Shown: positions 20,556-41,012, numbered from the whole stretch's first letter. The stretch is DNA of 62,906 nt, filler included, from Octopus bimaculoides (GCF_001194135.2; 3 parts of 3 records of this genome joined end to end with filler, not necessarily neighbours in it), one strand, 5' to 3'. The notes: generated by a model from the letters alone, not told the origin. Made by a program: numbers and translations.

Positions 20556-20601
<46 letters not shown>

Positions 20602-21378: not shown

Positions 21379-21560
21379 TACCACCCTGTAAGCCGAATTC
21401 CAATTACAGTACAATTGATATAATTGGCACAATCATTGGGAAACTTAATATCCATTTCCACAGTAAAGTTGCACGAGAAAACTGTAATCTACAGAACCCC
21501 AGATAATATATCCTATTTTTTAAACTGTTTGGTCTAGTAATTAAATATATGGAGGTGGGT
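21379..21560 (+). promoter_or_regulatory. Conserved upstream block of paralog A (putative promoter)
   Basis: GCCGAATTC...TAATTGGCACAATC...TAAAGTTGCA.GA...CCCCAGA is shared with 29615-29800 and 36635-36810; TATAAAT occurs in B (29782) and C (36798), and degenerate TAAATATAT in A. Confidence 0.5.
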
Positions 21561-21750
21561 ACATGTTCGTGTGCACAATTCCTGATTACAGATTGTTTCT
21601 GCCTTTCAATTCAACATTTTTTCTTACAGTATATTGATCAACCTGGTGGTCTAGTAGAAGACATTTATTCAATGTGGTGCTGCGCAATGGAATCCAACTT
21701 AAACCCACGTTATTGCAAATATTACCACACATATAGTGTATAATATTGCA

Positions 21751-21757
21751 ATGTTGT
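21751..21757 (+). CDS. Paralog A candidate coding exon 1 (ATG TTG T)
   Basis: GTAAAT donor is positionally conserved in all three copies (21758, 29977, 36961), giving 148-153 bp introns; a phase-1 join yields MLFTIFLWITLSNG-C, a signal-peptide-like start. Confidence 0.35.
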
Positions 21758-21910
21758 GTAAATGCCAAGACTTTGAAAACTCAATAAAGAAAATCGTTGG
21801 CCAAGCATACACACGCATGAGCTCATTCAAAAAAGACACATTACATAATTAAACGCATAAATATTTATAACTAATTATTTAAATAACTTCTTATCCATTC
21901 TATATTTCAG

Positions 21911-22058
21911 TTACTATTTTTCTGTGGATAACATTGAGCAATGGTTGTTTGCAAACAGCTGTCGGTGAATTTATGAATTGTACAGCGAAATTAAATATCT
22001 CAGTCTCACTAGAAACGAATAGAATCGCGTTAAAACATCAGATGAGTGTGATATGCAA
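21911..22058 (+). CDS. Paralog A exon 2, Cys-rich secreted/surface protein
   Basis: TATATTTCAG acceptor and GTAATT donor; phase 1-2; xTIFLWITLSNGCLQTAVGEFMNCTAKLNISVSLETNRIALKHQMSVIC; same boundaries and cysteines in B and C. Confidence 0.85.
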
Positions 22059-22226
22059 GTAATTTAACATTTTATTAAATACAAATTATTCAATTTATTG
22101 TTCACTGCTTTATAATTCAGCCATAAGTCAGGCAGAGTAAGTCACACAATAAAATAAGATTGATATGAGGATAGGTAGAATACTAAAATGTCTGACATTT
22201 GTTTTCTTCTTAATGATAAACATGGT

Positions 22227-22532
22227 GGAGGCGCAATGGCCCAGTGGTTAGGGCAGCGGACTCGCGGTCATAGGATCGCGGTTTCGATTCCCAGACCGAG
22301 CGTTGTGAGTGTTTATTGAGCGAAAACACCTAAAGCTCCACGAGGCTCCGGCAGGGGATGGTAGCAAACCCTGCTGTACTCTTTCACCACAACTTTCTCT
22401 CACTCTTACTTCCTGTTTCTGTTGTGCCTGTAATTCAAAGGGTCAGCCTTGTCACGCTGTGTCACGCTGAATATCCTCGAGAACTACGTTAAGGGTATAC
22501 GTGTCTGTGGAGTGCTCAGCCACTTGCACGTT
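22227..22532 (+). mobile_element. Young tRNA-derived SINE family B (3' end lost in gap)
   Basis: GGAGGCGCAATGGCCCAGTGGTTAGGGCAGCGGACTCGCGG...GGTTTCGATTCCC (A-box/B-box-like); near-identical to 27026-27410 and 42854-43221; absent at the equivalent intron position of copy C. Confidence 0.9.
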
Positions 22533-22991
22533 NNNNNNNNNNNNNNNNNNNNNNNNNNNNNNNNNNNNNNNNNNNNNNNNNNNNNNNNNNNNNNNNNNNN
22601 NNNNNNNNNNNNNNNNNNNNNNNNNNNNNNNNNNNNNNNNNNNNNNNNNNNNNNNNNNNNNNNNNNNNNNNNNNNNNNNNNNNNNNNNNNNNNNNNNNNN
22701 NNNNNNNNNNNNNNNNNNNNNNNNNNNNNNNNNNNNNNNNNNNNNNNNNNNNNNNNNNNNNNNNNNNNNNNNNNNNNNNNNNNNNNNNNNNNNNNNNNNN
22801 NNNNNNNNNNNNNNNNNNNNNNNNNNNNNNNNNNNNNNNNNNNNNNNNNNNNNNNNNNNNNNNNNNNNNNNNNNNNNNNNNNNNNNNNNNNNNNNNNNNN
22901 NNNNNNNNNNNNNNNNNNNNNNNNNNNNNNNNNNNNNNNNNNNNNNNNNNNNNNNNNNNNNNNNNNNNNNNNNNNNNNNNNNNNNNNNNNN

Positions 22992-23049
<58 letters not shown>

Positions 23050-23062
23050 GTTTATATATATA

Positions 23063-24227
23063 TACAGGGTGCGTAAGCTATTTGAGAATTGATTTGTGAT
23101 TATAAAAAAGAAACAGATATATAATAACAGATAATAACTTTACTTATCAAAAACTGCTATGAGGATAAAAATAAACCTTCTTTTCTAAAACAATATTCAA
23201 TAAAGCCACCTTCATCTTCAGCAACTGCTTCTATATGAGATCTAAATCATCTACATGCTCGAATTAAGTGGCCCTGATTCATTTTGGACATTACTTTGAC
23301 TATGGCAGCTTTCATAGAATGTTTGGTGTTATAGGCGTGTTCATTGACTTCTCTCTCAACAATGCTCCACATGTAATAGTCCAATAGATTGAGATCTGGA
23401 GAATTAGGAGACCAAATGTTAGGGGTTATGTGATCATGGGAATTTTCATCCTTCCATTCTTGTGTTACTAGAGCCATATGCAGAGTCCTTCTGAAGCACA
23501 TATGGCCTTCTATTGCATACACTGTCTATCCAGGGCTTAACAATTATTTCCAGGACCTTAATGTAGGCGGCAGAGTTAACTCTAAGACATTGTGGAAAGA
23601 AGTAAGGAGGTATCACATGTCCTTCATTGCTGACAACTCCTAAAATCATGACAGTTGCAGAAAATTGTGTATGCATAACACTTGGAACTTCAGAAGGGTC
23701 TAAACATAATCATCTGTCATTTCTTCTGTTAACTTTTTGATCTTGGTCGAAGTTTTTCTTGTTTGAGAAAAAAACCAAATCAAATCATGGATTTTTCAGT
23801 TTGCCTTAGATCTGATATAGTGATTTTCTTTTGCTTTTTCTGACAAATTGATTTTTCCCCATCATGTAAGACATATCTGATTCGTGAACAACCTTTCTGA
23901 TTGTTCCTTCTGACACATAGAGATCTTTTGCAATTGACCTCAAAGACTTTCTGGGATTGTAATCAATAATCTGTTGAACTTGCTGGATAAATCCAGATGT
24001 TCTGATGATTTCAGAGTGTTTAGAATTCTTTTTATGCTTTGATGCTGGTGATACATTTCCATCTTCAATTTCTAGCTCCTTACAAATTTTGTAACCACAA
24101 TAACAGCATGACTCTTCGTTTCTTGAGTAAGCTAAGGGTCTGCCATTGTTATTTTCTGAAACAAAGATTATACAGAGATAGAAAAAATGCAGCAATGACC
24201 CCAAAAATGTATGTCCCCCAAATACCT

Positions 24228-24230
<3 letters not shown>
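23063..24230 (-). mobile_element. Near full-length decayed maT (DD37D-type) Tc1/mariner transposon in intron 2 of paralog A
   Basis: Minus-strand fragments NPRKSLRSIAKDLYVSEGTIRKVVHE; ATVMILGVVSNEGHVIPPYFFPQCLRVNSAAYIKVLEIIVKPW; WSPNSPDLNLLDYYMWSIVEREVN...KAAIVKVM; frameshifted; begins TA-CAGGGT at 23063. Confidence 0.85.
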
Positions 24231-24271
<41 letters not shown>

Positions 24272-25462
24272 TTATTTTATTCCACACGGGTAGAAATATA
24301 GAAAAATGAAGTTAAAAGTGCACTGGGATTCGTTTAGATTTTTTAGTTTTAAATTTTTAATGACAACCAGTTTCACAAATTCCTCTGATTTTCAAAAGTT
24401 GACACAGCTATGCTGCAACTGTTTTTCTTCTAATAGTATCTGCGTTCATAGATACAAACCATAACTATACAAGTATTGGGCTCCATAGAAACAACTCCTG
24501 TCCACTTTATCATATCACAGAGTTAGAGAGCCCGGTTTGGGAACTGGCACTAGACATATTCACTCAACCGTGTCAACCTTAATTTACGGCGCAAAACATA
24601 TAGCAACATGATATTAACACATGGACATAGCGGGGGAACCGACAAAAAATTTCTAAGGCTAATCACGTGGTCTCTACCACATCTGACATAAATTTCAGAC
24701 AGTCTTCATTGTTTGGGATTGGCACTTGACATATTCATTCAATCATGACAGCTTTAACTTACGACACGAAAGATAATGTCACTTGACATTCAAGAACGGA
24801 CACAGCAGGAAACTTACAAAAGTTTCTAAGCCTAATCACGTGATCATACTCGGCCTGTCAGAACGTATCCAAAACTGAAACTAATTTCAGTTATGTCCTC
24901 TCAATAAAAATACGAGAATCTTTGAACTCCAAACTGAATCAATACAATTGCAACATAGCTCCACGTCTTTTTATCTCACCCTTTGAAAATCAGAGAAATC
25001 TGTGAAACCGGTTAAGTCTTTAAAAATTTACACATACAAAAAGCGTAGTAATATCTGTTTGAGTAGCTGATGATAGGAATGCAAATATTTTTATGTTTGA
25101 CTGTGAATTTCTTACATCTTAGTCTCGTTATTTTGGATTGGCCTTTATTCTTGTAAAATGGAAAGTGTTTCTGGGGATATTGTTTGTTTTTCTTCATAGG
25201 CAACCTAATTAAACTTGGACAAGGCTTAGATATTAGTGTCTAGATCTAGGAGGTTCAGTGGCTTATAGCTTACTGTTTCTTTATTGGTAGGGTCAACAAA
25301 TAAGGTATTCCATCCAGTGAGAGATAAATATCATTTAACATACACAGAATTTAAAAAGCACCCGCACACACATGTATGTATGTATGTATGTATGTATGTA
25401 TTCATCTATCTATCTATCTATCTATACGTACATCTGTCTTCTAAATTTATTTCTTTTTCTAG

Positions 25463-25608
25463 AATGGGACCAAACGACAAACAAGTATTCCAATCTTGCT
25501 TCGATACTTTAAAAAGATGTGATCAATTTATGATAATCGCAGATACTCTTGGGACAAATATCATGAATTTTGTTGAGGCCAGCGAGAAACTGTGTGGAGA
25601 CGAAGACG
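25463..25608 (+). CDS. Paralog A exon 3
   Basis: TTTCTTTTTCTAG acceptor, G|GTAAGA donor; phase 2-1; MGPNDKQVFQSCFDTLKRCDQFMIIADTLGTNIMNFVEASEKLCGDED. Confidence 0.88.
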
Positions 25609-25880
25609 GTAAGATTTAGTTTTATTCTTGTTAAGGTTCTTTTTCTTGTCATTGTTAGTTAAGGAATACAAACGGGTAGCTTTCCTGTTTCACAGCTGTC
25701 GTCCAAAGTATGACCATCGGTATACCTTCTTTACTAATTGTTTTGTTTTTGTTCATAATTAATACAATTGTAATTGATATTTTGCCTTATAATTTCAAAT
25801 ATAATTAAATACGCCACCTTAATCAAAGGTTATTTCTTTAAATTCCAATAGTATATATAAGAAATTATATTTACTTTTAT

Positions 25881-25923
<43 letters not shown>

Positions 25924-26105
25924 TACATACATACATACATANNNNNNNNNNNNNNNNNNNNNNNNNNNNNNNNNNNNNNNNNNNNNNNNNNNNNNNNNNN
26001 NNNNNNNNNNNNNNNNNNNNNNNNNNNNNNNNNNNNNNNNNNNNNNNNNNNNNNNNNNNNNNNNNNNNNNNNNNNNNNNNNNNNNNNNNNNNNNNNNNNN
26101 NNNNN

Positions 26106-26136
<31 letters not shown>

Positions 26137-26700
26137 AAAGTTTTAAATTTTTACATTTAAGAGAGAGATTTGATGCTAATATCCATATCAATGTTATTTA
26201 TTCCTAAGGAGTCTAATTTAGATTTTTTGCGGTGAAATCTCCTGCTATATTGGTAACGATTACATAGTTTACTATGAAATATTATATACAATCACATAAT
26301 CTCCTAATCCCACATCGTTCTCTCTGTACATGGAAGTCCTGATACACGTTAACTTTATCATAAGTGATATTACTCTTTGATATCAGTCAGATTAAGAAAT
26401 AACTCTATAGATACAACCCTAAAAAGCAATTACTTCTCCGACAGACTGGCAAAGTCGAAGTTGCAAATACTACTCCGCCTCATCACTCATTCCTTCTATC
26501 TTTATAACAGCAATTCTTACTTATCTGAAATACTATATTCTCTATCACACTTGTGAAATATTTACTGCGTACACACACGCTAACACACGGACATAAACAC
26601 ACATGTACATACACAAATATACTTATAAACAGACATATGATTTAAAGAAACTCTAAATGAAATAGTAATTTATAGCACATTTTACTTCAATCTATTTCAG

Positions 26701-26872
26701 TTATACTTGATAATATGCCGTGTTTAATACCAAAGATAATGGCTGTAGCAACAAATACATCAACGAATGAAACAAAGGAATTTCAGCAGCTCTACAAGAA
26801 AGGGAATGACTTATTTATGCAGGTGATGCTAAGAAAAATTTTAAGAGAAGAATACAACAGGAAATATTGTCC
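26701..26872 (+). CDS. Paralog A exon 4
   Basis: TCTATTTCAG acceptor, CC|GTATGT donor; phase 1-2; ILDNMPCLIPKIMAVATNTSTNETKEFQQLYKKGNDLFMQVMLRKILREEYNRKYC; same 172-bp length as B exon 4. Confidence 0.88.
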
Positions 26873-26923
26873 GTATGTAGAGAAAACTTGTTTCGATTAT
26901 TTAATGATGCTTCAGTGATGATT

Positions 26924-27410
26924 AGGCGGCGAGATGGCGGTATCGTTAGCACGCCGGGTGAAATCTTTAGTGGTATTTCATCTGTTGCAACGTTCTGAGT
27001 TCAAATTCCGCCGAGGTCAATTTTGGGAGGCGCAATGGCCCAGTGGTTAGGGCAGCGGACTCGCGGTCATAGGATCACGGTTTCGATTCCCAGACCGAGC
27101 GTTGTGAGCGATTATTGAGCGAAAACACCTAAAGCTTCACGAGGCTCCGGCAGGGGATGGTGGCGAACCCTGCTGTACTCTTTCACCACAACTTTCTCAC
27201 CTCTTACTTCCTGTTTCTGTTGTGCCTGTAATTCAAAGGGTCAGCCTTGTCACACTGTGTCACGCTGAATATCCTCGAGAACTACGTTAAGGGTACACGT
27301 GTCTGTGGAGTGCTCAGCCACTTGCACGTTAATTTCACAAGCAGGCTGTTCCGTTGATCGGATCAACTGGAACCCTCGACGTCGTAAGCGACGGAGTGCC
27401 AACAACAACA
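26924..27410 (+). mobile_element. Composite SINE insertion: family A 5' part fused to a full family B copy, flanked by an 11-bp duplication
   Basis: CAGTGATGATT at 26913-26923 and 27409-27419; SINE A head 26924-27025 and SINE B 27026-27410; the empty site in paralog B has one copy (GAGTGATGATTG, about 34263). Confidence 0.8.
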
Positions 27411-28109
27411 GTGATGATTGAAAGACGTGGAAAAGTGTTAATCCAATTAGATTCAAACCTCAACGCCCTATAATCGGATCTCACTGAGGTTGATTTCCAT
27501 CTCTCCTGCGCAGTATGATGAATATGTTATATGCTATAATATATGCTATAATATATGCTATAATATGCTATATGTTATAGATATGCTATATGCTATAATA
27601 TATAAACCCTCTTCTACTAAGTATTAACATGTTACTTTTGAAAAGAATTTTTCATATTACAATTGTAATGTTAATATCCACGTTGTGGATACTGATGTAC
27701 GTGTCACTGCGAATGTCCTCTTCATATATGTCTGTGAAAACATGCGGACTACATGTCGATAAACCCACACAGACAGACAGACAGATATGTAGATAGATAG
27801 ATAGATGTTTAATATGCACACAAAAAGAGAAGCGTACATATGTAGTTGAAAAAGTCTCTACATTGAACGTGGAAAAGCGTTCTCTACATTTGTCGAGTGT
27901 TCAGGAGTAGGCTAGATATAAATGTACACGTTTTATCGTAAGGATAGTAGAAGTAATGTTGGTGGATACGTTCAGGTACTAAGGACAATTGTTAAAACTA
28001 GGGTGAAGTACGCAGTGGAATTCCATACGTGTTTCAATAATACTCAGCACCATTTCACAAAGCCCACATAACACAACAATAAATGTCAGGATATCATTAC
28101 GATCACGTA

Positions 28110-28330
28110 ACACCGAACTTGTAAGCCTCTGAACTCGTCAAATTTTAATCGCATTTGGAGTACTATTGAAAGGGAGACTAATCGGTATCTTCAGAATACC
28201 ATAGCTTCACTAAAAGCGGCCATCTTCCAGGTGATATCCAAAATGAATAAGAATCATTTAGTGCAGGCATATCAATGATTCCTGATTCCATTGATGTAAA
28301 AATCGAAGCTGAAGACGGATTCAGAGAAAA
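28110..28330 (+). mobile_element. Old maT transposase 3' remnant in intron 4 of A (shared with B at 35431-35600)
   Basis: Translation ERETNRYLQNTIASLKAAIFQVISKMNKNHLVQA aligns with EREVNEHAYNTKHSMKAAIVKVMSKMNQGHLIRA of the 23-24 kb element. Confidence 0.65.
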
Positions 28331-28727
28331 ATCCTATAAGAAATCTTATCGAAAAAGTGTACACAATTTTCATTAAAATACATTTGGCTTTTGATAGATT
28401 AAAGTTGTTTTATTACTTTCCCAATTATATTTATTAGAAATAAAGTTTGTGAGGGGTATTTGAAAACATATGCTACACTTCTTGTTGAATACCTCATCGA
28501 ATTACCCAATTTTCAAAGTTGGGATATATTTTATGAAATGAAAACCGGAAGTGATATCTGGAGAATAAACTGAAAATTTTATAATTCCATTGTAGATATG
28601 TAATCTTATTTTACCCATTAAATATTCATTGCTCTTTTTCTGGTATCATATTGTACGGAATTATCTATTGTTATTGTGCTTTGTGAAAACTAAAATGAAA
28701 CTTCAAGATGATATTTTATCTTTTCAG

Positions 28728-28938
28728 ACTTTTGGTAGAGGGAATTGAAAAAGTGGCCGATTTTAGGTGCCCAGAAAAGTTTACTAAAATAATCCAAAAC
28801 TACGCCTATGATATAATGTCTGACACATGCAGATCAATCAACAATATTGCTTCATCTGGTATAAAATCACTTCCAAATATTTCTTTCGTTTCCCTTGCTG
28901 TTTCGAATCATACTTTTTTGCGATTAGTTACAAAGTGA
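28728..28938 (+). CDS. Paralog A exon 5 (probably terminal)
   Basis: TATCTTTTCAG acceptor; LLVEGIEKVADFRCPEKFTKIIQNYAYDIMSDTCRSINNIASSGIKSLPNISFVSLAVSNHTFLRLVTK*; an alternative donor at 28859 (GTATAA) cannot be excluded. Confidence 0.8.
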
Positions 28939-28989
28939 AGCTCGGTGACTTATGTATCGATTAACTCCATCACCACAAAGTGCCTAAAT

Positions 28990-29285
28990 CAGAAACCAAA
29001 GGTTATTCCCATGCTGCTCATTGATGAGCATTCTGATAACTAACTAGATTGGCATCAAAACTGTCCCTCATTCTCTATACATTCTAGATCTTGCTGGCTG
29101 GAACTTTTGGTTATTCCCCAAGCTGAACGAAGAGCTTAAGGGCAATCATTTCGAAGGTGAAGAAGGCTGTAACAAGAGTCCTCGACACCCTCACATTGGA
29201 GGAATTCCGTGGAACCTTCATGAAGTTACTGGAGCACTATATGTGCATTGAAGTCAGAGGATCTTATATTGAAGGGGTTTAGTTT
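28990..29285 (+). mobile_element. Mariner transposase C-terminal remnant downstream of A (shared with B at about 36290-36530)
   Basis: ...TTTTGGTTATTCCCCAAGCTGAACGAA... (FWLFPKL), VTRVLDTLTLEEF and CIEVRGSY motifs typical of mariner C-termini. Confidence 0.65.
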
Positions 29286-30125
29286 TCTACTTCTTTGGAA
29301 TTAATAAATGCCTCTCCTGAAAATGTCCGGAAATTTATGGAATGCAATTTGTACCTACCATCATATAGATAAACATATATCTACACTCTTCCAGACAGAT
29401 ATATATTTATATGTGTGTGTAGATTTTGTAGGAAACATACTACACTTGTTTCACTTTATAGCTTTGTATTGCTAGTTATTTGTTGTTAAATGTATTACAT
29501 AATCTGAAGTACATAACAAAGCCATCTCGTCAGGTATTCTGATCAGTTGAATTTTGAGCCATCCTTGTTCTCTTGAGTGGTTGACAAACCGAGAATGTCG
29601 GTATTTATCCTGACTACCTTGTAGGCCGAATTCACAGTACAGTACTAATGAGTTAATTGGCACAATCATTGAGAACCCTACTCCTCATCTCCACGATAAA
29701 GTTGCATGACATATCCGCAGTCTCCAAAACTCCAGATAACAATTAAATATCCTATTTTTAAATTGCTTATTTTCTCCAGTGTATAAATGTGTGGAGGTGG
29801 ATACGTGCTTCTGTGTACAATTCCTGATAACAGATTGTTTTTGCTTTCCAATTCAAAAATATATAACCAAAACTTATTGATCAACTGAAATAGATTCAAT
29901 GTGGTGCACAATAGAATCGAACCTAAACCCCTGTTATTGAAAATATTACCACACAGTTGTAATGCTACAATCTTCTGTAAATGCTAAGATGTTAAAAACA
30001 ATAGAGATAATCGTTGACCACACATGCCCATGCACAAACACACTCAAAATAGACACACATTACATAACTAAACGCATAAATGCAACTAATTTCTTAAATA
30101 ATTATTTACCCATTATACATTTCAG

Positions 30126-30267
30126 TTACTATGTCTCCACAAATACCATCGAGCAATGGTTGTATGGGGGAAGCTATCGATAGATATCGGAAGTGTCTGT
30201 CGGATTTAAATCCGAATCTCAGCTTGCATAAACTCTCGCCAAAAGGACAAATGGAGTTCATGTGCAA
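30126..30267 (+). CDS. Paralog B exon 2
   Basis: CATTTCAG acceptor, AA|GTAATT donor; xTMSPQIPSSNGCMGEAIDRYRKCLSDLNPNLSLHKLSPKGQMEFMC; the 6-nt length difference from A preserves frame. Confidence 0.82.
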
Positions 30268-30552
30268 GTAATTTGACATTTTATTAAATACTAATCTAAT
30301 TGTTTACTGTCTTATAATTTATGAAATCTTGTACCTATGATAGAAGTCAGTCAGATTAAGTTCCACAATAAAATGAGATTGATATGAAGATAGCTATGGT
30401 ATTTATATTATTTATTTAAAGGACACAATACATAATAGCTTCATATGTTCAGAAATAATAGCTTCATATGTTCAGAAATATCTCAAACATTCATCAGACA
30501 CAAACCACATATCATAACGAACGGTACATTATATATATGCGTGTGTGTTTGT

Positions 30553-30611
<59 letters not shown>

Positions 30612-32078: not shown

Positions 32079-32330
32079 TCAAAATTCACTCTTACTGCAT
32101 TGTGCGAAAGTACATTTATATGCGTGTAGACATCTCGAGAGTTGTTCAAAGATTCTATCAATTATCTTCTCGTTCGTCCACAGAATAGGCAGGGATTCCT
32201 CGGAGTTAAAACGGCATCTTTTGGAAATTATATTGTATGGTTTCGCATACCTTACTATGGGCCAATTAATGCTGTACTTCTTTTTATACTCCTTCAATCG
32301 CCATACAAAATCTGCCAAAGATGTTGAATG
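32079..32330 (-). mobile_element. Penelope-like element remnant (C-terminal end of GIY-YIG endonuclease region)
   Basis: ORF DFVWRLKEYKKKYSINWPIVRYAKPYNIISKRCRFNSEESLPIL...EQLSRCLHAYK resembles the PLE terminal pattern W.LK....Y.I.W.I...A.PY....KRC.LC..EK...LS.CRH..K. Confidence 0.6.
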
Positions 32331-32408
32331 TCTCTTATTTTATCCTTCATTTTATAGAATACACACACACACACACACACACTCACACACACACACACAC
32401 ACACACAC

Positions 32409-32443
32409 ATTTCCGACGAAGAGCTGTGCTCGAAACGTTAACA
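32409..32443 (+). ncRNA. Degenerate minimal hammerhead-ribozyme-like motif (PLE pLTR)
   Basis: CCGACGA-A-GAGC-TGT-GCTC-GAAACGTT; the core has a U4>C change and stem I is weak. Confidence 0.4.
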
Positions 32444-32870
32444 ATACTCTTCTTTCACTGAGTGTCAAATTGATATATTACTTGTAGATGCCCTCACGTT
32501 GGTGTTTTTTTTCTTTCTTAATATATATAAGAATCCATACAAACCAAAGGTTATTGTTAAATAGAAAAAGTGAAAACAGCACGAAAGTGTTGTGTTTTTT
32601 ATTTTTTTTGTTATATATTTGCTACATTAAGTGACTTTTATGTGTATGACCATCTTCTCAATTATTAAATTTTGAAAATCAACGGATATGGGATAAAAGA
32701 AATTGGAAATTTAAAACTGTTCTCATAATTTGGGCATAGTTAACAAAATGGTATATACATGAATATATATATATATACGTTATACGTATGGCTGTATGTA
32801 TTTATTCATGCATGTGTGTATATGTATATGTATGTATACATTTTTCTTCTACATTTATTTCTTTTTCTAG

Positions 32871-33019
32871 GATAGCAAAATCAGAAGACAAATATCAACT
32901 CACTCTTTGCTTCACCCATTTTAAAACTTGTGAACAATTTAGCAGGACCGTAGACATTCTTGGATTTGAAATCTCACGTTGGATGGAGACCTTCGAGAAG
33001 CTGTGTCAATACGAAAACG
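32871..33019 (+). CDS. Paralog B exon 3
   Basis: TTTCTTTTTCTAG acceptor, G|GTAAGA donor; IAKSEDKYQLTLCFTHFKTCEQFSRTVDILGFEISRWMETFEKLCQYEN. Confidence 0.88.
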
Positions 33020-33285
33020 GTAAGATTTAGTTTTCTTCTGGTCATTTTTGGTGAGGTAATATAAACTTGCAGCTTCCCAGTCTCACAGTTGTCGTCCAAA
33101 GCATGACCGTCAATTACTGGTTGTTTTCATTTGTTGTTTTCTTATCTAAACACAATTACAAGGGGGATTTTGTATTTTAATTAAAAATATTATTAAAAAC
33201 TCTGTTAACCGAAGGATTTTTAAACTGCCAATATTACATACAAAACACATTATGTTTACTTTTACGCACACATGCACACACATAC

Positions 33286-33337
<52 letters not shown>

Positions 33338-33774
33338 ACGTATTATGTATGTATGCATGTGTGCATTTATGTAGGTATACATGTATATTTTTCTTAGAGT
33401 TTAATTTAAATTCAAGCTGGCCGCTAACAAAGTGGCATGATTTACTGAGTTAAAAGAGTTCCTGATGCTTGTAAATATATGGTTGAGCTGGTGTGTTGGT
33501 TTAAGCGTCGATGCATACACCCAAGTGTGTGCATCTATTCACTTAAGAATCTCAGATGGAGAATTTTTGAAATGTCTCACAAATCTTCACTGTGTCACTA
33601 ATAGATTGGATTTGGAGAATCTGCGTCAGTTTATTTGTTCCTTTTCCGTGCAGCCGTGTATTTTTTTAGGTTTTTGCGCAAATTTGAAATTTCCTTTGGC
33701 TGTGCGCGGTTATAACAGCAATTCTTCCTAATCTGAACTAGAACAATTTCCATAACACCTACGAAATATTCGAT

Positions 33775-33828
<54 letters not shown>

Positions 33829-33914
33829 NNNNNNNNNNNNNNNNNNNNNNNNNNNNNNNNNNNNNNNNNNNNNNNNNNNNNNNNNNNNNNNNNNNNNNNN
33901 NNNNNNNNNNNNNN

Positions 33915-33969
<55 letters not shown>

Positions 33970-34050
33970 TATATTTATGTACTAACTCAAGATTTAAAGA
34001 AACCCTAAATAAAACGGTAATTTACAGTACTTACCTTCAATTTGTTTCAG

Positions 34051-34222
34051 TTTTGCTTGAGGATATGCCATGTTTCTTACAAAATATAATGAATCTATTT
34101 AACAATAATTCAAAGAATGAATTAAAGGAATTTCAGTTGCTCTTCGAGAAAGGGAGACGCTTATTCATGCAGCAGGAACAAAATGAAATTACAAGAGAAG
34201 AATACTACAGGAAATATTGTCC
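34051..34222 (+). CDS. Paralog B exon 4
   Basis: TTTGTTTCAG acceptor, CC|GTATGT donor; LLEDMPCFLQNIMNLFNNNSKNELKEFQLLFEKGRRLFMQQEQNEITREEYYRKYC. Confidence 0.88.
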
Positions 34223-34768
34223 GTATGTAGAGAAAACTTGTTTTTTATTATTTAATAATACTTGAGTGATGATTGGTAGACACGGTAAAGTTTTAATGCA
34301 ATTATATTCAAGGCTCAACGTCCTTAGTTCCGATCTCACTGGAGTTGACTTCCATCTCTCTCGGTCGGTATAATAAATAACAGCAATATACACCCTTTTC
34401 CACAACGTTTTTGTATGTTATTTATGAAAAGGAATGTACATTATCGATTATAATATAATTATCCACGCAGTGTTACTGAAGTGCGAGTGCTCTTCTTCAG
34501 TAACAAAATCTCTTATACCATCCATTCCCCAATCGGAATTTACCTTCGTATAAATAAAGATTAAATGCATTTTCTGCATTTTATATATAGGAACAGAAGT
34601 TCCGTTGAGAGAATAGACGATTGAAATTATATTTGTTACTGGGGAAATCCAACCACGCTGAAACACGTATCCGATTGTCCGATGAAGTCCCTCAGAGCCC
34701 GACTCGATGCGTTTTTATACACATATAAATTTCCTTATTATATTTCCTTATCATAAGAGTCATAGAAA

Positions 34769-34963
34769 ACGTTGAGGTGCCGAATACGTTGAGGTGCCGA
34801 ATACGTTGAGGTGCCGAATACGTTGAGATGCCGAATACGTTGAGATGCCGAATACGTTGAGGTGCCGAATACGTTGAGGTGCCGAATGCGTTGAGGTGCC
34901 GAATGCGTTGAGGTGCCGAATACGTTGAGGTGCCGAATACGTTGAGATGCCGAATACGTTGAG
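34769..34963. repeat. 17-bp minisatellite (ACGTTGAGGTGCCGAAT)n running into a gap
   Basis: At least 11 units with only G/A variants at two positions. Confidence 0.95.
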
Positions 34964-35982
34964 NNNNNNNNNNNNNNNNNNNNNNNNNNNNNNNNNNNNN
35001 NNNNNNNNNNNNNNNNNNNNNNNNNNNNNNNNNNNNNNNNNNNNNNNNNNNNNNNNNNNNNNNNNNNNNNNNNNNNNNNNNNNNNNNNNNNNNNNNNNNN
35101 NNNNNNNNNNNNNNNNNNNNNNNNNNNNNNNNNNNNNNNNNNNNNNNNNNNNNNNNNNNNNNNNNNNNNNNNNNNNNNNNNNNNNNNNNNNNNNNNNNNN
35201 NNNNNNNNNNNNNNNNNNNNNNNNNNNNNNNNNNNNNNNNNNNNNNNNNNNNNNNNNNNNNNNNNNNNNNNNNNNNNNNNNNNNNNNNNNNNNNNNNNNN
35301 NNNNNNNNNNNNNNNNNNNNNNNNNNNNNNNNNNNNNNNNNNNNNNNNNNNNNNNNNNNNNNNNNNNNNNNNNNNNNNNNNNNNNNNNNNNNNNNNNNNN
35401 NNNNNNNNNNNNNNNNNNNNNNNNNNNNNNAAAGGGAGACTAGTTGATATCATCGCAATACCATAGCTTCAATGAAAGCGGCCATTTTCCAGGTGATATG
35501 CAAAATCAATAAGAACTGTTTAGTGCAGGAATGTCAATGATTCCAGTCCTGCATTGAAGCAATCACCGAAACTGAAGATGGATTCATAGAAAAAATTTAT
35601 TTAAAAATTCATCGAAAACAATGCGCACAATCTTTTTTATTAGAATACGTTTGGTTTTTTTGCTACATTAGATTTGTTTCATTAGTATACCAAATATGTC
35701 TTCAAGTGCCTCTAGCGCCCTGTATTTTCTGATAAATTCCATACTTTTTTTTTTTTTTTTAGTATGTCATACCATTTCCAAAATTTCAAACTTGGATTAT
35801 ATTTAAAGAACAAACAAAAATTTCATAATTCCATTATAAATATGTTCATCCTATTAAATTTACATTGCTCTATCTCTCGTATCAATAAAATATTGTTGTC
35901 GTTGTTTTTAGAGCCATTTCCTGTTCTGAAACATCTTTGGAAACTAAAATGAAACTTCAAAATGTTATTTTTACTTTTTCAG

Positions 35983-36175
35983 ACTTTTGAAAGATGGAAT
36001 TGGAAAACTGACCGACTTTAATTGTCCAGAAAACTTTATCAAAATAATTCAGAACAACAGCTATTATATTATGTCTGACAAATGTAGATCTATCAACAAT
36101 ATTGGTTCATCTGGTAAAAAATCACTTCGAAATATCTCCCTCATTTCCTTGTTGTTTAAGAATTTTTTCTATTAG
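35983..36175 (+). CDS. Paralog B exon 5 (probably terminal)
   Basis: TTACTTTTTCAG acceptor; LLKDGIGKLTDFNCPENFIKIIQNNSYYIMSDKCRSINNIGSSGKKSLRNISLISLLFKNFFY*. Confidence 0.8.
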
Positions 36176-37108
36176 CTAAAAGTTATTAGCAAAAAAAAAA
36201 GTGACATACGCATCAATTAACCCCATCCCCATAAAGTTACTAGCTTCGTGCCTAAATCGGAAACTATGCGCAAAATTTATGCAAAGTTTGTTCTCAAGCT
36301 ACTCTGTGATGAACATCCTGGTAACCAACTACATGACAGAGATGGGCATCAAAATTGTCCCTCGCCCTTCCTACAATTTAGGCTTTGCTTCTTCTAGCTT
36401 TTAGTTATTCCCCAAGCTGAACGAAAACCTTAGAGGTAATTGTTTTGAAAGTGAAGGAAGCTGTGTCAAGGGTCCTGGCTATCTTCACTTTAGAGGAACT
36501 CTATGGGGTGTTCACAAAGTGACTGGAGCATAACGAAACCATTTCGTGAGGCAATTGGAGTAGTTAAAGTTTGAGCCATGTTTGTTCTATTTAATGGTTA
36601 AATGGTTAAGAATGCCGCCAGGATTTCTTCTAAATACCCTGTGAGCCGAATTCACGTTGGATTATATCTGCGTTAATTGACTTAATCGTTGAGAACCCTA
36701 CCACTCATCTCCACGGTAAAGTTGCATGAAATAACCGCAATCTACGAACCCCCAGAAAACCGTTAAATATCTTTAAAATTGCTTGTTCACTCTAATATAT
36801 AAATATGTAGAGGTGTGTATTTGTGTTTACAATCTCTGGCTGTTGATTTTTCTGCTTTTCAAATCAACAATCTATACTTAGAACTTATTGATCAACCCAG
36901 AGATCTAGTAACACACGTTATTGCAAATACTACCTCTCGAACATAATGTTGCAATGTTGAGTAAATGCTAAGATTTTAAAATCAGAGAATTGTTGTCCAC
37001 ACATACTCATGCACAAGAACACTCAAAAAAGACATACATTTTATAACTAGGCGCATAAATACTTATAGCTAATTCTTTAAATAACTGCTTATGCATTTTA
37101 TATTTCAG

Positions 37109-37244
37109 TTAATATTTTCCGGTGGATACCAATGGGTGACGGTTGTATGGAGAAGGATATCGGTGAATTTCAGAAATGTACATCGAAATTAAGTTTTACG
37201 GCGGGTAAACTTAGCCTAAGAAATCAGATCGAATTGATGTGCAA
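37109..37244 (+). CDS. Paralog C exon 2
   Basis: TATATTTCAG acceptor, AA|GTAATT donor; xNIFRWIPMGDGCMEKDIGEFQKCTSKLSFTAGKLSLRNQIELMC; in-frame length change. Confidence 0.83.
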
Positions 37245-37749
37245 GTAATTTGACATTTTATTAAATATAACTTCTTAATCTAATTATTCACTGCCTTATA
37301 ATTTATAAAATCCTGTACCTGTGTTGGAAATCAGTTAGAATATGTTAAACAAAGAATAAGATTGGTATAAGGTTGACTAGAGTATTTAAACATTAGAGAT
37401 TTGTTTACTTCTTTACAGTAAACATGGTAAACTACGTATTTGCTTCAAATTTTTGCGTAAGGCCAGCAATTTCGAGGGTGCTACCAGAATCGTTAGCTTG
37501 CCGGGGAAAATGCATTGCGGCATTCCATCCGTTTTTACGTTCTGAGTTCAAATTCTGCCGAGAACCACTTTAGTTTTCATCCTTTCTATAAATTATGTAA
37601 CAGTTGAGCACTTACGTCGATGTAATGGACATACCCACCTCCCAAGAAATAGCTGGTCTTGTGGTTAGGGCAACACCGCTTGGTACATATATATATATAT
37701 CATATATGCATAAAACTAAGAAGCAAATTATGTGAAACACGGACACAAA

Positions 37750-38030
37750 CTATTTACATACATACATACATGCATACATATATACATGCATACATACATG
37801 CATGCATACATACATACATGCATACATACATACATACATACATACATGCATACATACATGCATGCATACATACATCCATACATACATACATGCATACATA
37901 TATACATGCATACATACATGCATGCACACATACATACATGCATGCATACATACATACATACATACATATATACATGCATACATACATGCATGCATACATA
38001 CATGCATGCATACATACATACATACATACA

Positions 38031-38060
<30 letters not shown>
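37750..38060. repeat. Compound (CATA)n/(CATG)n microsatellite
   Basis: Directly visible. Confidence 0.95.
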
Positions 38061-38062
<2 letters not shown>

Positions 38063-39344
38063 GTAGAATAAGAGATAGGAAGGCTTTGGTACAATATTAA
38101 ATGTTTGATAAAATGATTAGAAATGGTTTTTCTGACAGTTTTTTCACTTTGATAATTAGATATTTACAAAAGATGATTCTGATCGGAGTTTCTTGCTTGA
38201 AGGCGGTATTCAAACTGATAATTTAGAGTCTATTTTTTTACTTAAATTGGGGGTATTTGATTACAAGCACAAACATATACAANNNNNNNNNNNNNNNNNN
38301 NNNNNNNNNNNNNNNNNNNNNNNNNNNNNNNNNNNNNNNNNNNNNNNNNNNNNNNNNNNNNNNNNNNNNNNNNNNNNNNNNNNNNNNNNNNNNNNNNNNN
38401 NNNNNNNNNNNNNNNNNNNNNNNNNNNNNNNNNNNNNNNNNNNNNNNNNNNNNNNNNNNNNNNNNNNNNNNNNNNNNNNNNNNNNNNNNNNNNNNNNNNN
38501 NNNNNNNNNNNNNNNNNNNNNNNNNNNNNNNNNNNNNNNNNNNNNNNNNNNNNNNNNNNNNNNNNNNNNNNNNNNNNNNNNNNNNNNNNNNNNNNNNNNN
38601 NNNNNNNNNNNNNNNNNNNNNNNNNNNNNNNNNNNNNNNNNNNNNNNNNNNNNNNNNNNNNNNNNNNNNNNNNNNNNNNNNNNNNNNNNNNNNNNNNNNN
38701 NNNNNNNNNNNNNNNNNNNNNNNNNNNNNNNNNNNNNNNNNNNNNNNNNNNNNNNNNNNNNNNNNNNNNNNNNNNNNNNNNNNNNNNNNNNNNNNNNNNN
38801 NNNNNNNNNNNNNNNNNNNNNNNNNNNNNNNNNNNNNNNNNNNNNNNNNNNNNNNNNNNNNNNNNNNNNNNNNNNNNNNNNNNNNNNNNNNNNNNNNNNN
38901 NNNNNNNNNNNNNNNNNNNNNNNNNNNNNNNNNNNNNNNNNNNNNNNNNNNNNNNNNNNNNNNNNNNNNNNNNNNNNNNNNNNNNNNNNNNNNNNNNNNN
39001 NNNNNNNNNNNNNNNNNNNNNNNNNNNNNNNNNNNNNNNNNNNNNNNNNNNNNNNNNNNNNNNNNNNNNNNNNNNNNNNNNNNNNNNNNNNNNNNNNNNN
39101 NNNNNNNNNNNNNNNNNNNNNNNNNNNNNNNNNNNNNNNNNNNNNNNNNNNNNNNNNNNNNNNNNNNNNNNGACAAATATGATGTTTTTACACCTTTTTA
39201 CCAGAAGAGAGAATTTTTTTCTATTACGGTAACTGCAATGAATTTGCGTTTAGAAGTTGAAATACGTCACAAGCATATTTTAACTAACCTAAAGTTCGCT
39301 TGCGCCTCAACACCGCTTGGCACAGATATTAATGTAATGTGTGT

Positions 39345-39380
<36 letters not shown>

Positions 39381-39556
39381 GTGTGTGTGTGTAGGTGTGT
39401 CTGTGTGTGTCTATGTCTGTGTGTGCGTGCGTGTGTGCGCACGTATCTCTGTGTCTGTGTGTCTATGTAGACACATGGAATATGCATGTATGTATGCATG
39501 TATGTATGTATGTATATATGTATGCATGTATGTATTGATTTTGTTTCTTTTTCTAG

Positions 39557-39702
39557 GAAGGGATCAAAGACCAATGAGCTACTTCATTCTTGCTACGATA
39601 ATTTAAAAAAATGTGATCAAATTAGGACGATCTCAGATCTATTAGGGATAAATATCTCCCGTTTGACGGAGACCGACGAGAAGCTGTGTAAAAACGAAGA
39701 AG
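39557..39702 (+). CDS. Paralog C exon 3 (exons 4-5 missing beyond the scaffold join)
   Basis: TTTCTTTTTCTAG acceptor, G|GTAAGG donor; KGSKTNELLHSCYDNLKKCDQIRTISDLLGINISRLTETDEKLCKNEE. Confidence 0.87.
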
Positions 39703-39861
39703 GTAAGGTTAAGTTTTCTTCTTGTTAATGCTTTCTTCTGGTCATTGCTGGTTAAGCATTACAACCTAGAAGCTGTCCACTCCAACACTTGTCGTACAGA
39801 GCATTGCCGTCAGTATATATCTTCGTTAATAGTTGTTTCGATTTTTGTTCATATCTAACAC

Positions 39862-40560
39862 AATCGTGAGGAGATCTTAATACTCGGACGCTGGACGAGA
39901 GCGTGCAGAACAATTTGGTCGCCCGGCGCGCACCTCAGGCAGACCCGGCTGACAGACCTTCCATGCTTGTAGTGTGGAGCAAGCAATGCCCTCACCCAGT
40001 CAACGATTTCTGGAAACTATCCATGGGCTCCGAACTGAAAGTCCTTCAGCTCATTCTCGTCGATACCTAGAATCTCCCCGAGAACGTCATCACACTTTCC
40101 CGCTACTAAGCCTTATATAACACCAGAGTGGAAATCCTACCGACTGCATTGACGGGCTGATAGGCGATTGTGAGCGCCTAACGACACTTTAGGCGCCAGG
40201 TGCTCTGCCTCGGTGTATGCTTGATCCAGGACTACAGCTCAGTCAAAGAGACGAGCTGTGAATAATCCTGTTTTACAAACGGCGACCACACCTACTCACC
40301 GTCAAAGAAACACTGAAGAAATCGTAGCCTCGGTGCATATCTGTGCATCAGCAGCCATGGCATGACCAGTCCTCCATTCAGGGTATTTTGACAGCAAATG
40401 GCGCGCCTTGACCAGTGGAACGCATCCGTTCCAAAGAAGTGGGAAGAGTATGCGCTCCAGTTTGGTTGGACGTAAACCGGAGCAAGACACGACAGTCAGG
40501 TTGTAGTGTATGACGGAAGCGATGTGAGGATTCATCACTTTCACCCGGCCTTTCAGAGAT
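39862..40560 (-). mobile_element. L1/Tx1-clade LINE ORF2 3' fragment inserted in intron 3 of paralog C
   Basis: Minus-strand LERILFPLLWNGCVPLV..., GKCDDVLGEILGIDENELK and YKHGRSVSRVCLRCAPGDQIVLHALVQ (degenerate CxxC...H zinc finger); absent from intron 3 of A and B. Confidence 0.7.
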
Positions 40561-40963
40561 AGGTTTCTCTCTATTTATGGCTGAGATTGGCTACCCTGCT
40601 CGTGACTTTGTCCTAGTTCTTGTACACATAGAATTCTGGACCAAACCAGACCCCCCCCCCAGCATTTTAACTGATTCTCTGTCGATGGGCCACACTACAG
40701 GCCTAGTGCCTTCTCATGGTCAATTTTTGCTCCTATATTCTTTTAGAACAGTGCTTACCAAGGCTATGTACCGATACGGTTCTCCTACGTCCAAGATACA
40801 ATCCTAAACAGCAATTACTTTGCCGACAGTGTGGTAAATGTCGATGTTACAAACACTACACCTCTTCACTTTTTCCTTTTGTCTTTATAACAGCATTTCC
40901 TGCGAATCTCAACTTGTATGTTCTCTATTACACCTGCGAAATATTCACTGCGTACACGCGCGT

Positions 40964-41012
<49 letters not shown>

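What the first reader, a model, noticed from the sequence alone, without database searches (positions are those of the whole stretch)
21379..41012. Hidden tandem cluster of three paralogous genes for Cys-rich secreted or cell-surface proteins
Seen: ten exons with canonical GT-AG sites, identical intron phases (1,2,1,2), open frames and only in-frame indels assemble into paralogs A (21911-28938), B (30126-36175) and partial C (37109-39702) in a 7-8 kb head-to-tail unit. Spliced A is about 225 aa with Cys spacing C-x10-C-x24-C-x12-C-x6-C-x24-C-x11-C-x48-C-x14-C-x19-C. B keeps all ten Cys (only x22/x13 differ) and C keeps its first six. Several N-x-S/T sites are present. Inference: a lineage-expanded extracellular family that I cannot name. 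It loosely resembles DUF19 (PF01579)-type helical Cys proteins, but that assignment is a guess.
Basis: partly seen in the sequence, partly recalled or inferred. Interest (0 to 1): 0.82.

Follow-up and report, generated by a model that had tools for sequence, protein, structure and literature searches.

The report
One octopus gene, three repeated modules
The three "hidden paralogous genes" are three copies of a four-exon cassette inside one already annotated octopus gene (Octopus bimaculoides LOC106869700), which encodes a fast-evolving, cysteine-rich surface protein of unknown function found so far only in octopods.

Summary
All ten exons, the AG/GT sites, the phases 1,2,1,2 and the ten-Cys spacing sit at the stated coordinates. 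All six assembly gaps lie in introns.

The interpretation needs correcting. The piece is 100% identical to O. bimaculoides chromosome CM046613.1 and lies inside RefSeq gene LOC106869700 (XP_014771027/8), so it is not hidden. A, B and C are internal modules of that one gene, not three genes.
- The only start exon (MNRVLHQYIFV) lies about 11.9 kb upstream of module A, beyond a 9.4-kb gap. B and C have none.
- A phase-1 GT donor inside exon d (TCATCTG|GTAWAA) joins each module in frame to the next exon a.
- In B and C the former signal-peptide segment has lost its hydrophobicity. In A and B the former GPI-like tail and poly(A) signal have decayed. Module C's last exon, outside the window, keeps a strongly hydrophobic tail.
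- O. sinensis and O. vulgaris orthologs have the same three-module layout.

Against O. sinensis, reading frame, splice sites and 23/23 Cys are kept, yet dN/dS is about 1.3 and exons diverge faster than introns.

Each module is predicted all-helical (pLDDT 84) with no PDB or Pfam match. The DUF19 label was not reproduced. Relatives were found only in Octopus and Argonauta.

The parts
20556..21910 (+). 3' part of intron 0 of LOC106869700. The start exon (MNRVLHQYIFV, phase-1 donor G|GTAAGA) lies outside the piece, about 11.9 kb upstream of exon a and beyond a 9411-N gap.
   Evidence: Piece = L002:20573-41029 at 100% identity; exon 0 at L002:10001-10033. No exon-0 homolog anywhere in the piece on either strand.
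21321..29236 (+). Duplication unit A. It runs from about 590 bp of intron-0 sequence upstream of exon a to about 300 bp past the relic stop codon.
   Evidence: blastn block boundaries between units.
21911..22058 (+). Module A exon a. It supplies the end of the signal peptide (VTIFLWITLSNG) and Cys 1-3. Acceptor phase 1, donor phase 2.
   Evidence: 100% match to XP_014771027/8.
25463..25608 (+). Module A exon b (Cys 4-6). Donor phase 1.
   Evidence: O. sinensis ortholog L003:9919-10064 with AG/GT kept.
26701..26872 (+). Module A exon c (Cys 7-8). Donor TGTCC|GTATGT, phase 2.
28728..28858 (+). Module A exon d as used in the gene models (Cys 9-10). It ends at the internal phase-1 donor TCATCTG|GTATAA, just after the codons for 'SS'.
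   Evidence: Protein junction ...SINNIASS|VTMSPQ... in P0004/P0013. Donor position; conserved in O. sinensis.
28859..28938 (+). Relic of the ancestral terminal-exon tail of module A (GIKSLPNISFVSLAVSNHTFLRLVTK*). It is intronic in the gene models. Hydrophobicity is lost, but the open frame is still kept in O. sinensis.
29545..36530 (+). Duplication unit B.
30126..30267 (+). Module B exon a. The former signal-peptide segment is now a polar linker (VTMSPQIPSSNG), followed by Cys 1-3.
32871..33019 (+). Module B exon b (Cys 4-6).
34051..34222 (+). Module B exon c (Cys 7-8).
35983..36113 (+). Module B exon d as used in isoform X1 (Cys 9-10). It ends at the internal phase-1 donor TCATCTG|GTAAAA.
   Evidence: Junction ...NNIGSS|VNIFRW... 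in P0013.
36114..36175 (+). Relic tail of module B (GKKSLRNISLISLLFKNFFY*). It is degenerate and is frameshifted by a 1-bp indel in O. sinensis, so it is treated as non-coding.
36562..41012 (+). Duplication unit C, cut by the piece edge. Exon c is predicted inside the next assembly gap (L002:41030-42204). Exon d, with an intact hydrophobic tail, is at about L002:43343-43543.
37109..37244 (+). Module C exon a (linker VNIFRWIPMGDG plus Cys 1-3).
39557..39702 (+). Module C exon b (Cys 4-6). RefSeq isoform X1 reads on into the intron here (GKVKFSSC*, to about 39728).

Best explanation
The window holds most of one gene, Octopus bimaculoides LOC106869700.

Origin. The ancestral family gene has five exons: a tiny start exon, then exons a-d. 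It encodes a single module of about 190 aa, all-helical with ten Cys, between a signal peptide and a GPI-type C-terminal signal. The neighbouring paralogs LOC106869697 and LOC106869698 still have this structure. A segment running from about 0.6 kb upstream of exon a to about 0.3 kb past the stop codon was then duplicated twice in tandem.

Why the copies splice in frame. Exon a has a phase-1 acceptor. The terminal exon contains a latent phase-1 GT donor in the Gly codon of 'SSG'. The cassette is therefore phase-symmetric (1-1), and the copies join in frame to give: signal peptide - module A - module B - module C - GPI signal.

Decay in the internal copies. The former signal-peptide segment became a polar linker. 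The former GPI tail, stop codon and poly(A) signal became intron sequence and are decaying.

Function (inferred). The product is probably an N-glycosylated, lipid-anchored protein on the outer cell surface. Its disulfide-stapled helical scaffold is conserved while its other residues are replaced at or above the neutral rate. I therefore favour a surface binding or recognition role towards a changing partner (microbe, gamete or conspecific cue).

Shown versus inferred. Shown: the anatomy, identity with the annotated gene, module orthology, splice-site conservation, and the substitution and indel patterns. Inferred: actual use of the internal donors in vivo (this rests on gene models from three species, not on reads I could inspect), the GPI anchorage, and the function.
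For: Identity with the annotated gene:
- The piece is 100% identical to CM046613.1 inside the gene that encodes XP_014771027.1.
- P0004 and P0013 contain module A and module B residues identical to the window translation, joined at ...ASS|VTMSPQ... and ...GSS|VNIFRW....

B and C are not separate genes:
- No exon-0 homolog exists in the piece. Only 1.19 kb and 0.93 kb separate each relic stop from the next exon a.
- The O. sinensis (P0003) and O. vulgaris (P0012) models have the same three modules and the same junctions.
- All AG/GT sites, including both internal donors, are conserved in the gap-free O. sinensis locus.
- Maximum hydrophobicity of the exon-a N-terminal segment is 2.97 in A (read with exon 0), 0.13 in B and 0.70 in C.
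- Tail hydrophobicity is 3.1-3.5 for terminal modules and 1.5-1.7 for the A and B relics.
- ATTAAA lies at +74 and +88 after the C and D stops. It is absent at that position after the A and B stops.
- The B relic tail is frameshifted in O. sinensis.

The modules are coding and fast-evolving:
- Exon indels are all in frame where 10.4 frameshifting indels are expected (P = 3e-5).
- 23/23 Cys are kept and no stop codon appears; both together occurred in 0 of 20,000 simulations.
- dN/dS against O. sinensis is 1.31. Second codon positions change most.
- Exon divergence is 13.5% against 8.1% in alignable non-coding sequence.

Ancestral structure:
- LOC106869697 and LOC106869698 each have five exons and a single module.
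Against: - I could not inspect RNA-seq or Iso-Seq reads. Automated pipelines do sometimes fuse tandem duplicates, and two of the three models come from the same pipeline (Gnomon).
- Both O. bimaculoides isoforms are visibly distorted. X1 ends by reading into an intron. X2 skips B exon d and C exons a-c. The likely cause is that C exon c is hidden in an assembly gap.
- The A relic tail keeps its open frame in O. sinensis with 4 synonymous and 2 non-synonymous changes. This could mean that a one-module isoform ending there is also made.
- GPI anchorage rests on sequence features alone. No dedicated predictor was available.
Confidence: 0.85

Rival explanations
1. One reading: three separate paralogous genes, each transcribed and translated on its own, in a head-to-tail cluster.
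For: Each unit read alone gives an open frame that ends in its own stop codon. The family does form a true gene cluster at a larger scale: LOC106869698, LOC106869697 and LOC106869700 lie in a row on the same strand.
Against: - Exon a starts at a phase-1 acceptor in all units, so an upstream coding exon is required. None exists for B or C.
- The only in-frame Met near the start of B is not conserved in O. sinensis and would give no signal peptide.
- The signal-peptide and GPI-tail segments of the internal units have lost their hydrophobicity, and the poly(A) signals are lost.
- The B tail is frameshifted in the ortholog.
- Three species' gene models join the units.
Confidence: 0.04
2. Only exon 0 plus module A is a working gene, ending at the A relic tail. 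B and C are dead partial duplicates, and the fused database models are annotation artefacts.
For: The A relic tail ORF is conserved with a synonymous-biased pattern (4 syn, 2 non-syn). An AATAAA lies 365 bp past the A stop. Gene-prediction pipelines are known to chain tandem duplicates (general knowledge).
Against: - B and C have kept open frames, all Cys, all splice sites and only in-frame indels since the O. bimaculoides/O. sinensis split. The intron indel rate predicts about 10 frameshifts, and the simulation gives P(no stop) = 6e-4.
- This pattern requires that B and C are translated, and they can only be translated through upstream exons.
- The A tail is not a plausible GPI signal.
Confidence: 0.06
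3. Alternative cassette use: exon 0 is spliced to A, B or C in different transcripts, or the internal donor competes with polyadenylation. The locus would then make a set of one-, two- and three-module isoforms rather than a single product.
For: All exon-a acceptors are phase 1 and compatible with exon 0. RefSeq already lists two isoforms that differ in module content. The A relic tail is conserved as an open frame.
Against: - Exon 0 joined directly to B or C would give a very short hydrophobic core (YIFV plus a polar segment), so a poor signal peptide.
- The two RefSeq isoforms are better explained by the assembly gap that hides C exon c.
- The O. sinensis and O. vulgaris models contain all three modules in series.
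Confidence: 0.15

Closest known systems
O. bimaculoides LOC106869700 (XP_014771027.1 / XP_014771028.1; UniProt A0A0L8HMP3 / A0A0L8HMR4) and its orthologs O. sinensis LOC115218675 and O. vulgaris CAI9731999.1
   Same: It is this locus: 100% DNA identity, and modules A and B are identical residue for residue. The orthologs share the three-module order, the junction positions and all Cys.
   Different: The O. bimaculoides models are incomplete at module C because exon c lies in an assembly gap. None of these entries has a described function, and no paper in the searched library cites them.
Single-module paralogs LOC106869697 and LOC106869698 (O. bimaculoides), O. vulgaris P0002 and P0006, and Argonauta hians GAB1608877, GAB1601547 and GAB1611258
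   Same: Same ten invariant or near-invariant Cys, the same five-exon structure and phases where checked, a signal-peptide-like start and a hydrophobic C-terminal tail.
   Different: They have one module each, and 19-57% identity to module A.
DUF19 / T20D4.11-like domain (Pfam PF01579), a nematode extracellular Cys-rich domain
   Same: Both are secreted, Cys-rich, expanded in one lineage and of unknown function. UniProt labels the three multi-module octopus proteins 'DUF19 domain-containing protein'.
   Different: No PF01579 hit at E <= 10 for ten family proteins or for an 11-module concatenate. The family profile retrieves no nematode protein at E <= 1e-3. From memory, DUF19 has about 12 Cys in about 130 aa, against 10 Cys in about 190 aa here.
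GFR-alpha / GAS1 (GDNF receptor family, Pfam PF02351)
   Same: The resemblance is in architecture only and is recalled from memory: tandem all-helical domains with five disulfides each, tethered by a GPI anchor.
   Different: No Pfam hit. No GFR-alpha structure appears among the top 50 listed Foldseek PDB matches; the best match of any kind has E 0.79 and TM <= 0.26. The module here is about twice as long as a GFR-alpha domain.

Membership tests
Octopod LOC106869697/698/700 family (uncurated) | Significant full-length sequence similarity to family members. | tested here: met
   E = 3e-77 and 4e-71 for module A against P0001 and P0002. The profile search gave E of 1e-222 to 5e-07 for eight Octopus and Argonauta proteins.
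Octopod LOC106869697/698/700 family (uncurated) | Ten conserved Cys in a module of about 190 aa. | tested here: met
   Eight Cys columns are invariant and two are >= 90% conserved over 11 modules. A and B have all ten; C has its first six before the piece ends.
Octopod LOC106869697/698/700 family (uncurated) | Exon structure: start exon of 11 codons, then exons a-d with phases 1,2,1,2. | tested here: met
DUF19 (Pfam PF01579) | Match to the PF01579 profile at or near the gathering score. | tested here: not met
   hmmscan against Pfam-A (2025 copy) at E <= 10 gave no PF01579 line for A, B, P0001-3, P0005, P0008, P0009, P0012, P0013 or the 11-module concatenate. Caveat: HMMER's filters drop most hits above E of about 0.1.
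DUF19 (Pfam PF01579) | Reciprocal detection: the family profile finds bona fide DUF19 proteins. | tested here: not met
   hmmsearch of 1.84 billion representatives returned only octopod proteins plus three low-complexity or repeat hits at E <= 1e-3.
DUF19 (Pfam PF01579) | Label given by a public database. | tested here: inconclusive
   UniProt names A0A0L8HMP3, A0A0L8HMR4 and A0AA36BDF9 'DUF19 domain-containing protein', but names the single-module paralogs 'Uncharacterized protein'. The basis for the label could not be reproduced here.
DUF19 (Pfam PF01579) | Profile-profile or fold similarity to DUF19 models. | not testable with these tools
   No DUF19 alignment and no AlphaFold DB library were available. 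The PDB holds no match to the module model.
GFR-alpha/GAS1 (Pfam PF02351) | Match to the GDNF/GAS1 domain profile or to the solved GFR-alpha fold. | tested here: not met
   No Pfam hit. Foldseek against the PDB gave a best E of 0.79.
GPI-anchored surface proteins (a class, not a homology family) | N-terminal signal peptide. | tested here: met
   MNRVLHQYIFVVTIFLWITLSNG|C has a maximum mean Kyte-Doolittle score of 2.97 over 10 aa, followed by small residues. No dedicated predictor was run.
GPI-anchored surface proteins (a class, not a homology family) | C-terminal signal: small omega-region residues, a short spacer, then a hydrophobic tail with no charges that ends the protein. | tested here: met
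   The module C tail (outside the window) is SSGIKSLPNISFISLLFLILLFVTS, with Kyte-Doolittle 3.32 and no charged residue in the last 14. The same holds in P0001, P0002, P0003 and P0005. The criterion is not met by the A and B relic tails.
GPI-anchored surface proteins (a class, not a homology family) | Biochemical proof (PI-PLC release, lipid label). | not testable with these tools
   This needs an experiment.

The most novel reading that the evidence does not exclude
The module is a fold with no detectable relative outside Octopoda. The three-module gene records how a tandem duplication turned a signal-peptide segment into a linker, and a GPI tail with its 3' end into an intron, by waking a latent donor inside the terminal exon. 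The protein would be under diversifying selection as a surface recognition molecule (immune, gamete or chemotactile).
Probability: 0.35. Interest if true: 0.5.

Novelty: new member of a known kind. Interest (0 to 1): 0.3.

Why it matters
- It corrects the scan. The locus is not an unannotated gene cluster but part of RefSeq gene LOC106869700, so the 'hidden genes' claim falls away.
- The gene shows step by step how a phase-symmetric cassette duplication builds a multi-domain surface protein. The intermediate relics (decayed signal-peptide segment, GPI tail and poly(A) site) are still readable, and single-module paralogs sit next door for comparison.
- The family is restricted to octopods as far as HMMER can see. 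It has no curated family and no solved-structure relative, and it keeps its Cys scaffold while the rest changes at or above the neutral rate. That makes it a reasonable candidate for octopod-specific surface recognition biology.
- The current O. bimaculoides models of the gene are truncated by an assembly gap and could be corrected from the O. sinensis ortholog.

Tried and rejected
- Start exon. I searched the piece for a start exon in six frames with up to 5 mismatches, and by blastn and blastn-short with the LOC106869697 exon 0 plus 150-bp flanks. Nothing was found. A 14-nt match at 29477-29490 has no ATG or open frame.
- Pfam. Scans of single modules, full proteins and an 11-module concatenate gave only sub-threshold, mutually inconsistent hits: UPA_2, Cbl_N, CotJB, DUF6916, SCVP, ANIS5, and CPG4 at E 5.3. 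I treat these as noise.
- Solved structures. The PDB sequence search hit only designed coiled coils, at E >= 8e-4. Foldseek against the PDB, with the pLDDT-67 model and again with the pLDDT-84 model, gave nothing below E 0.79.
- Second word-indexed protein search with the 11-module profile. No new relatives and no Pfam-annotated hits.
- Literature search for the LOC, XP and UniProt identifiers. No papers. A search for DUF19 papers returned only a Pfam enrichment table.
- Rfam and tRNA scans of the piece found nothing.
- A transposase-like remnant downstream of exon d looked mariner-like from memory, but had no Pfam support, so I make no claim about it.
- dN/dS among the paralogous modules is 0.6-1.1. 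That cannot separate neutrality from selection, so I replaced it with the ortholog comparison.

Full report
**1. Checking the observation**

The piece (20556-41012) has 35.8% G+C and six N runs. A self-comparison shows three head-to-tail units at 66-78% identity, with blastn E-values down to 1e-127 and start-to-start spacings of about 8.2 and 7.0 kb.

I translated the conserved blocks and placed splice sites independently.

| Module | Exon a | Exon b | Exon c | Exon d |
|---|---|---|---|---|
| A | 21911-22058 | 25463-25608 | 26701-26872 | 28728-28938 |
| B | 30126-30267 | 32871-33019 | 34051-34222 | 35983-36175 |
| C | 37109-37244 | 39557-39702 | beyond the piece | beyond the piece |

- Every exon has AG before it and GT after it. 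The phases are 1 (acceptor of exon a), 2, 1, 2.

**2. The assembly gaps**

- All six gaps fall in introns, so no reading frame runs across a gap.
- The O. sinensis ortholog (L003) has no gaps. It is colinear with the window across five of the six gaps, and none of its exons maps into a gap.
- The first gap (22533-22991) lies upstream of what L003 covers. The exons on either side of it are joined in frame in the O. bimaculoides and O. vulgaris proteins.
- Most gaps abut microsatellites or a 17-bp minisatellite, so they are ordinary repeat-induced assembly breaks.
- O. sinensis introns are much longer in places (for example 9.7 kb against 1.9 kb). The estimated gap lengths should therefore not be trusted.

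**3. What the locus is**

- The first homology search found only two single-module proteins, from O. bimaculoides (LOC106869697, 233 aa) and O. vulgaris. They show what a complete protein looks like: 11 codons from a separate start exon (MDGILPRYIFV), then exons a-d, ending in SSGIKSLPNISLISLLFLILLFVIS.
- A full HMMER profile search then returned a 431-aa protein (P0004) and a 533-aa protein (P0003), with two and three copies of the module. A cluster look-up identified P0004 and P0013 as XP_014771028.1 and XP_014771027.1. These are isoforms X2 and X1 of O. bimaculoides LOC106869700. It identified P0003 and P0012 as the O. sinensis and O. vulgaris orthologs.
- The piece is 100% identical to L002:20573-41029 on chromosome CM046613.1, inside that gene. 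It is bounded by a 9411-N gap on the left and a 1175-N gap on the right.
- The proteins read: exon 0 (MNRVLHQYIFV, L002:10001-10033), then module A up to ...SINNIASS, then directly VTMSPQ... (module B exon a), then ...NNIGSS, then VNIFRW... (module C exon a).
- In the DNA, these junctions use a GT inside exon d: TCATCTG|GTATAA at 28858 and TCATCTG|GTAAAA at 36113. Both are phase 1, which matches the phase-1 acceptor of the next exon a.

**4. Why one gene rather than three**

- The piece contains no homolog of the start exon on either strand. The spacers between a relic stop and the next exon a are only 1.19 and 0.93 kb, and contain nothing like a start exon.
- The first 12 residues encoded by exon a, together with exon 0, form the signal-peptide core in module A (Kyte-Doolittle 2.97). 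They have become polar in B (0.13) and C (0.70).
- The tails downstream of the internal donors in A and B have lost the hydrophobicity that terminal tails keep (1.5-1.7 against 3.1-3.5). The ATTAAA found about 80 bp after the C and LOC106869697 stops is missing after the A and B stops.
- The B relic tail carries a 1-bp indel in O. sinensis, which shifts its frame.
- Both internal donors and all other splice sites are conserved in O. sinensis. All three species' models chain the modules at the same residues.
- B and C are clearly still translated (section 5), and they can only be translated through upstream exons.

The two odd O. bimaculoides isoforms have a simple explanation. C exon c lies in the gap just beyond the piece and is not found anywhere else in L002. 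As a result X1 reads into the intron after C exon b (GKVKFSSC*), and X2 jumps from B exon c to C exon d.

**5. Selection**

- Among the paralogous modules dN/dS is 0.6-1.1, which does not discriminate between neutrality and selection.
- Against O. sinensis, for nine orthologous exons (435 codons): dN = 0.164, dS = 0.125 and dN/dS = 1.31. By module the ratio is A 1.14, B 1.54 and C 1.35. Protein identity is 71%, and 23 of 23 Cys are conserved.
- Second codon positions change most: 61, 70 and 53 differences at positions 1, 2 and 3.
- Exons differ at 13.5% of sites, against 8.1% in 11 kb of alignable non-coding sequence.
- Exons carry three indels (6, 6 and 12 nt). Non-coding sequence carries 109, of which 88 are not multiples of three. 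At that rate 10.4 frameshifts were expected in the exons (P = 3e-5).
- With the same number of random substitutions, P(no stop) = 6e-4 and P(all Cys kept) = 5e-5.

The frame and the disulfide scaffold are therefore under constraint, while the remaining residues change at least as fast as neutral sequence. That pattern fits diversifying selection. The excess of dN over dS is not significant on its own, and the intron estimate is biased low because only alignable blocks were counted.

**6. Origin**

- LOC106869698, LOC106869697 and LOC106869700 lie in that order on the same strand within about 110 kb. The first two have the five-exon, single-module structure.
- The sequence TCATCTGGTATAAAA, which codes for SSGIK, is also present in the terminal exon of LOC106869697. 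A near-identical TCATCCGGTATAAAA is in the terminal exon of module C. The donor was therefore latent before the duplication.
- The duplicated segment runs from about 590 bp upstream of exon a to about 300 bp past the stop codon.
- Each window module has its own ortholog in O. sinensis, so the triplication predates the split of the two species. The Argonauta proteins found are all single-module.

**7. Protein family and fold**

- With an 11-module alignment, AlphaFold2 gives an all-helical model of module A: nine helices, mean pLDDT 84.4 and pTM 0.79.
- Foldseek against the PDB finds nothing below E 0.79 (TM <= 0.26). A sequence search of the PDB hits only designed coiled coils.
- Pfam-A gives no significant hit.
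I could not reproduce it, and the family profile does not retrieve any nematode DUF19 protein. I leave DUF19 membership as not supported; it has not been excluded at the level of fold comparison.

**8. Function**

Nothing is known and no paper cites these genes. The protein has a signal peptide, sequons, five probable disulfides per module, a GPI-type tail and rapid non-scaffold evolution. From these I infer a lipid-anchored surface glycoprotein that binds a changing external partner. This is inference only.

**9. Verdict**

It is wrong on the main claim, because these are three modules of one annotated gene, not three hidden genes.
- Novelty is modest. This is an annotated but uncharacterised member of the broad class of lineage-specific Cys-rich surface proteins, with an instructive duplication history.

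Noticed in passing
window 22222-22532 and 27026-27410; also L001:29101-29492 and L003:36900-37305: An interspersed repeat of about 310-385 bp, 97% identical between its two window copies and 90-95% identical to copies elsewhere in O. bimaculoides and O. sinensis. Its 5' end looks tRNA-derived (box A/B-like, ...TGGCCCAGTGGTTAGGG...GGTTTCGATTCCCAG...), so it is probably a SINE. ARAGORN calls no tRNA there. The insertion at 26924-27409 is specific to module A's intron c/d. A second tRNA-like head at 26920-27025 recurs at 37489-37562.
   Followed up: partly
window 34731-34963: A 17-bp minisatellite (GAATACGTTGAGGTGCC, at least 11 copies) runs straight into the gap at 34964-35430. The O. sinensis ortholog has only about 190 bp between the flanking matched blocks, so the stated gap length (467) is probably wrong.
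   Followed up: partly
window 25886-25941, 30546-30611, 33780-33828, 33915-33965, 37683-38282, 39330-39470: (CA)n, (TG)n and (CATA)n microsatellites flank most of the assembly gaps, which probably explains why the short-read assembly broke there.
   Followed up: no
window 28859-28938 against L003:15195-15274: The relic tail of module A keeps an open frame of the same length in O. sinensis, with 4 synonymous and 2 non-synonymous differences. The binomial P is about 0.03 if 24% of sites are synonymous (my own rough estimate). This is odd for sequence that is intronic in the gene models, and it may mark an alternative terminal exon that gives a one-module isoform.
   Followed up: partly
window about 29075-29260 and 36340-36530: Downstream of exon d in units A and B there is a conserved stretch whose translation (…WLFPKLNEELKGNHFEGEE…) reminded me of the C-terminus of a mariner-type transposase. 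Pfam gave no hit, so this is unverified. It is absent downstream of LOC106869697 and lies at the unit junctions.
   Followed up: partly
L002:41030-42204 (just right of the piece); window 39703-39728: RefSeq isoforms X1 and X2 of LOC106869700 both look like artefacts of the gap that hides module C exon c. X1 ends by reading into the intron (GKVKFSSC*). X2 skips B exon d and C exons a-c. The O. sinensis model gives the likely true three-module product.
   Followed up: yes
L004, L001, L002 (CM046613.1, about 46.53-46.64 Mb): At a larger scale there is a real tandem gene cluster of this family. LOC106869698, LOC106869697 and LOC106869700 lie on the same strand, about 12 and 18.5 kb apart.
   Followed up: partly
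window exons against L003: Exons diverge faster between the two Octopus species (13.5%) than alignable intron sequence does (8.1%), and second codon positions change most.
   Followed up: yes
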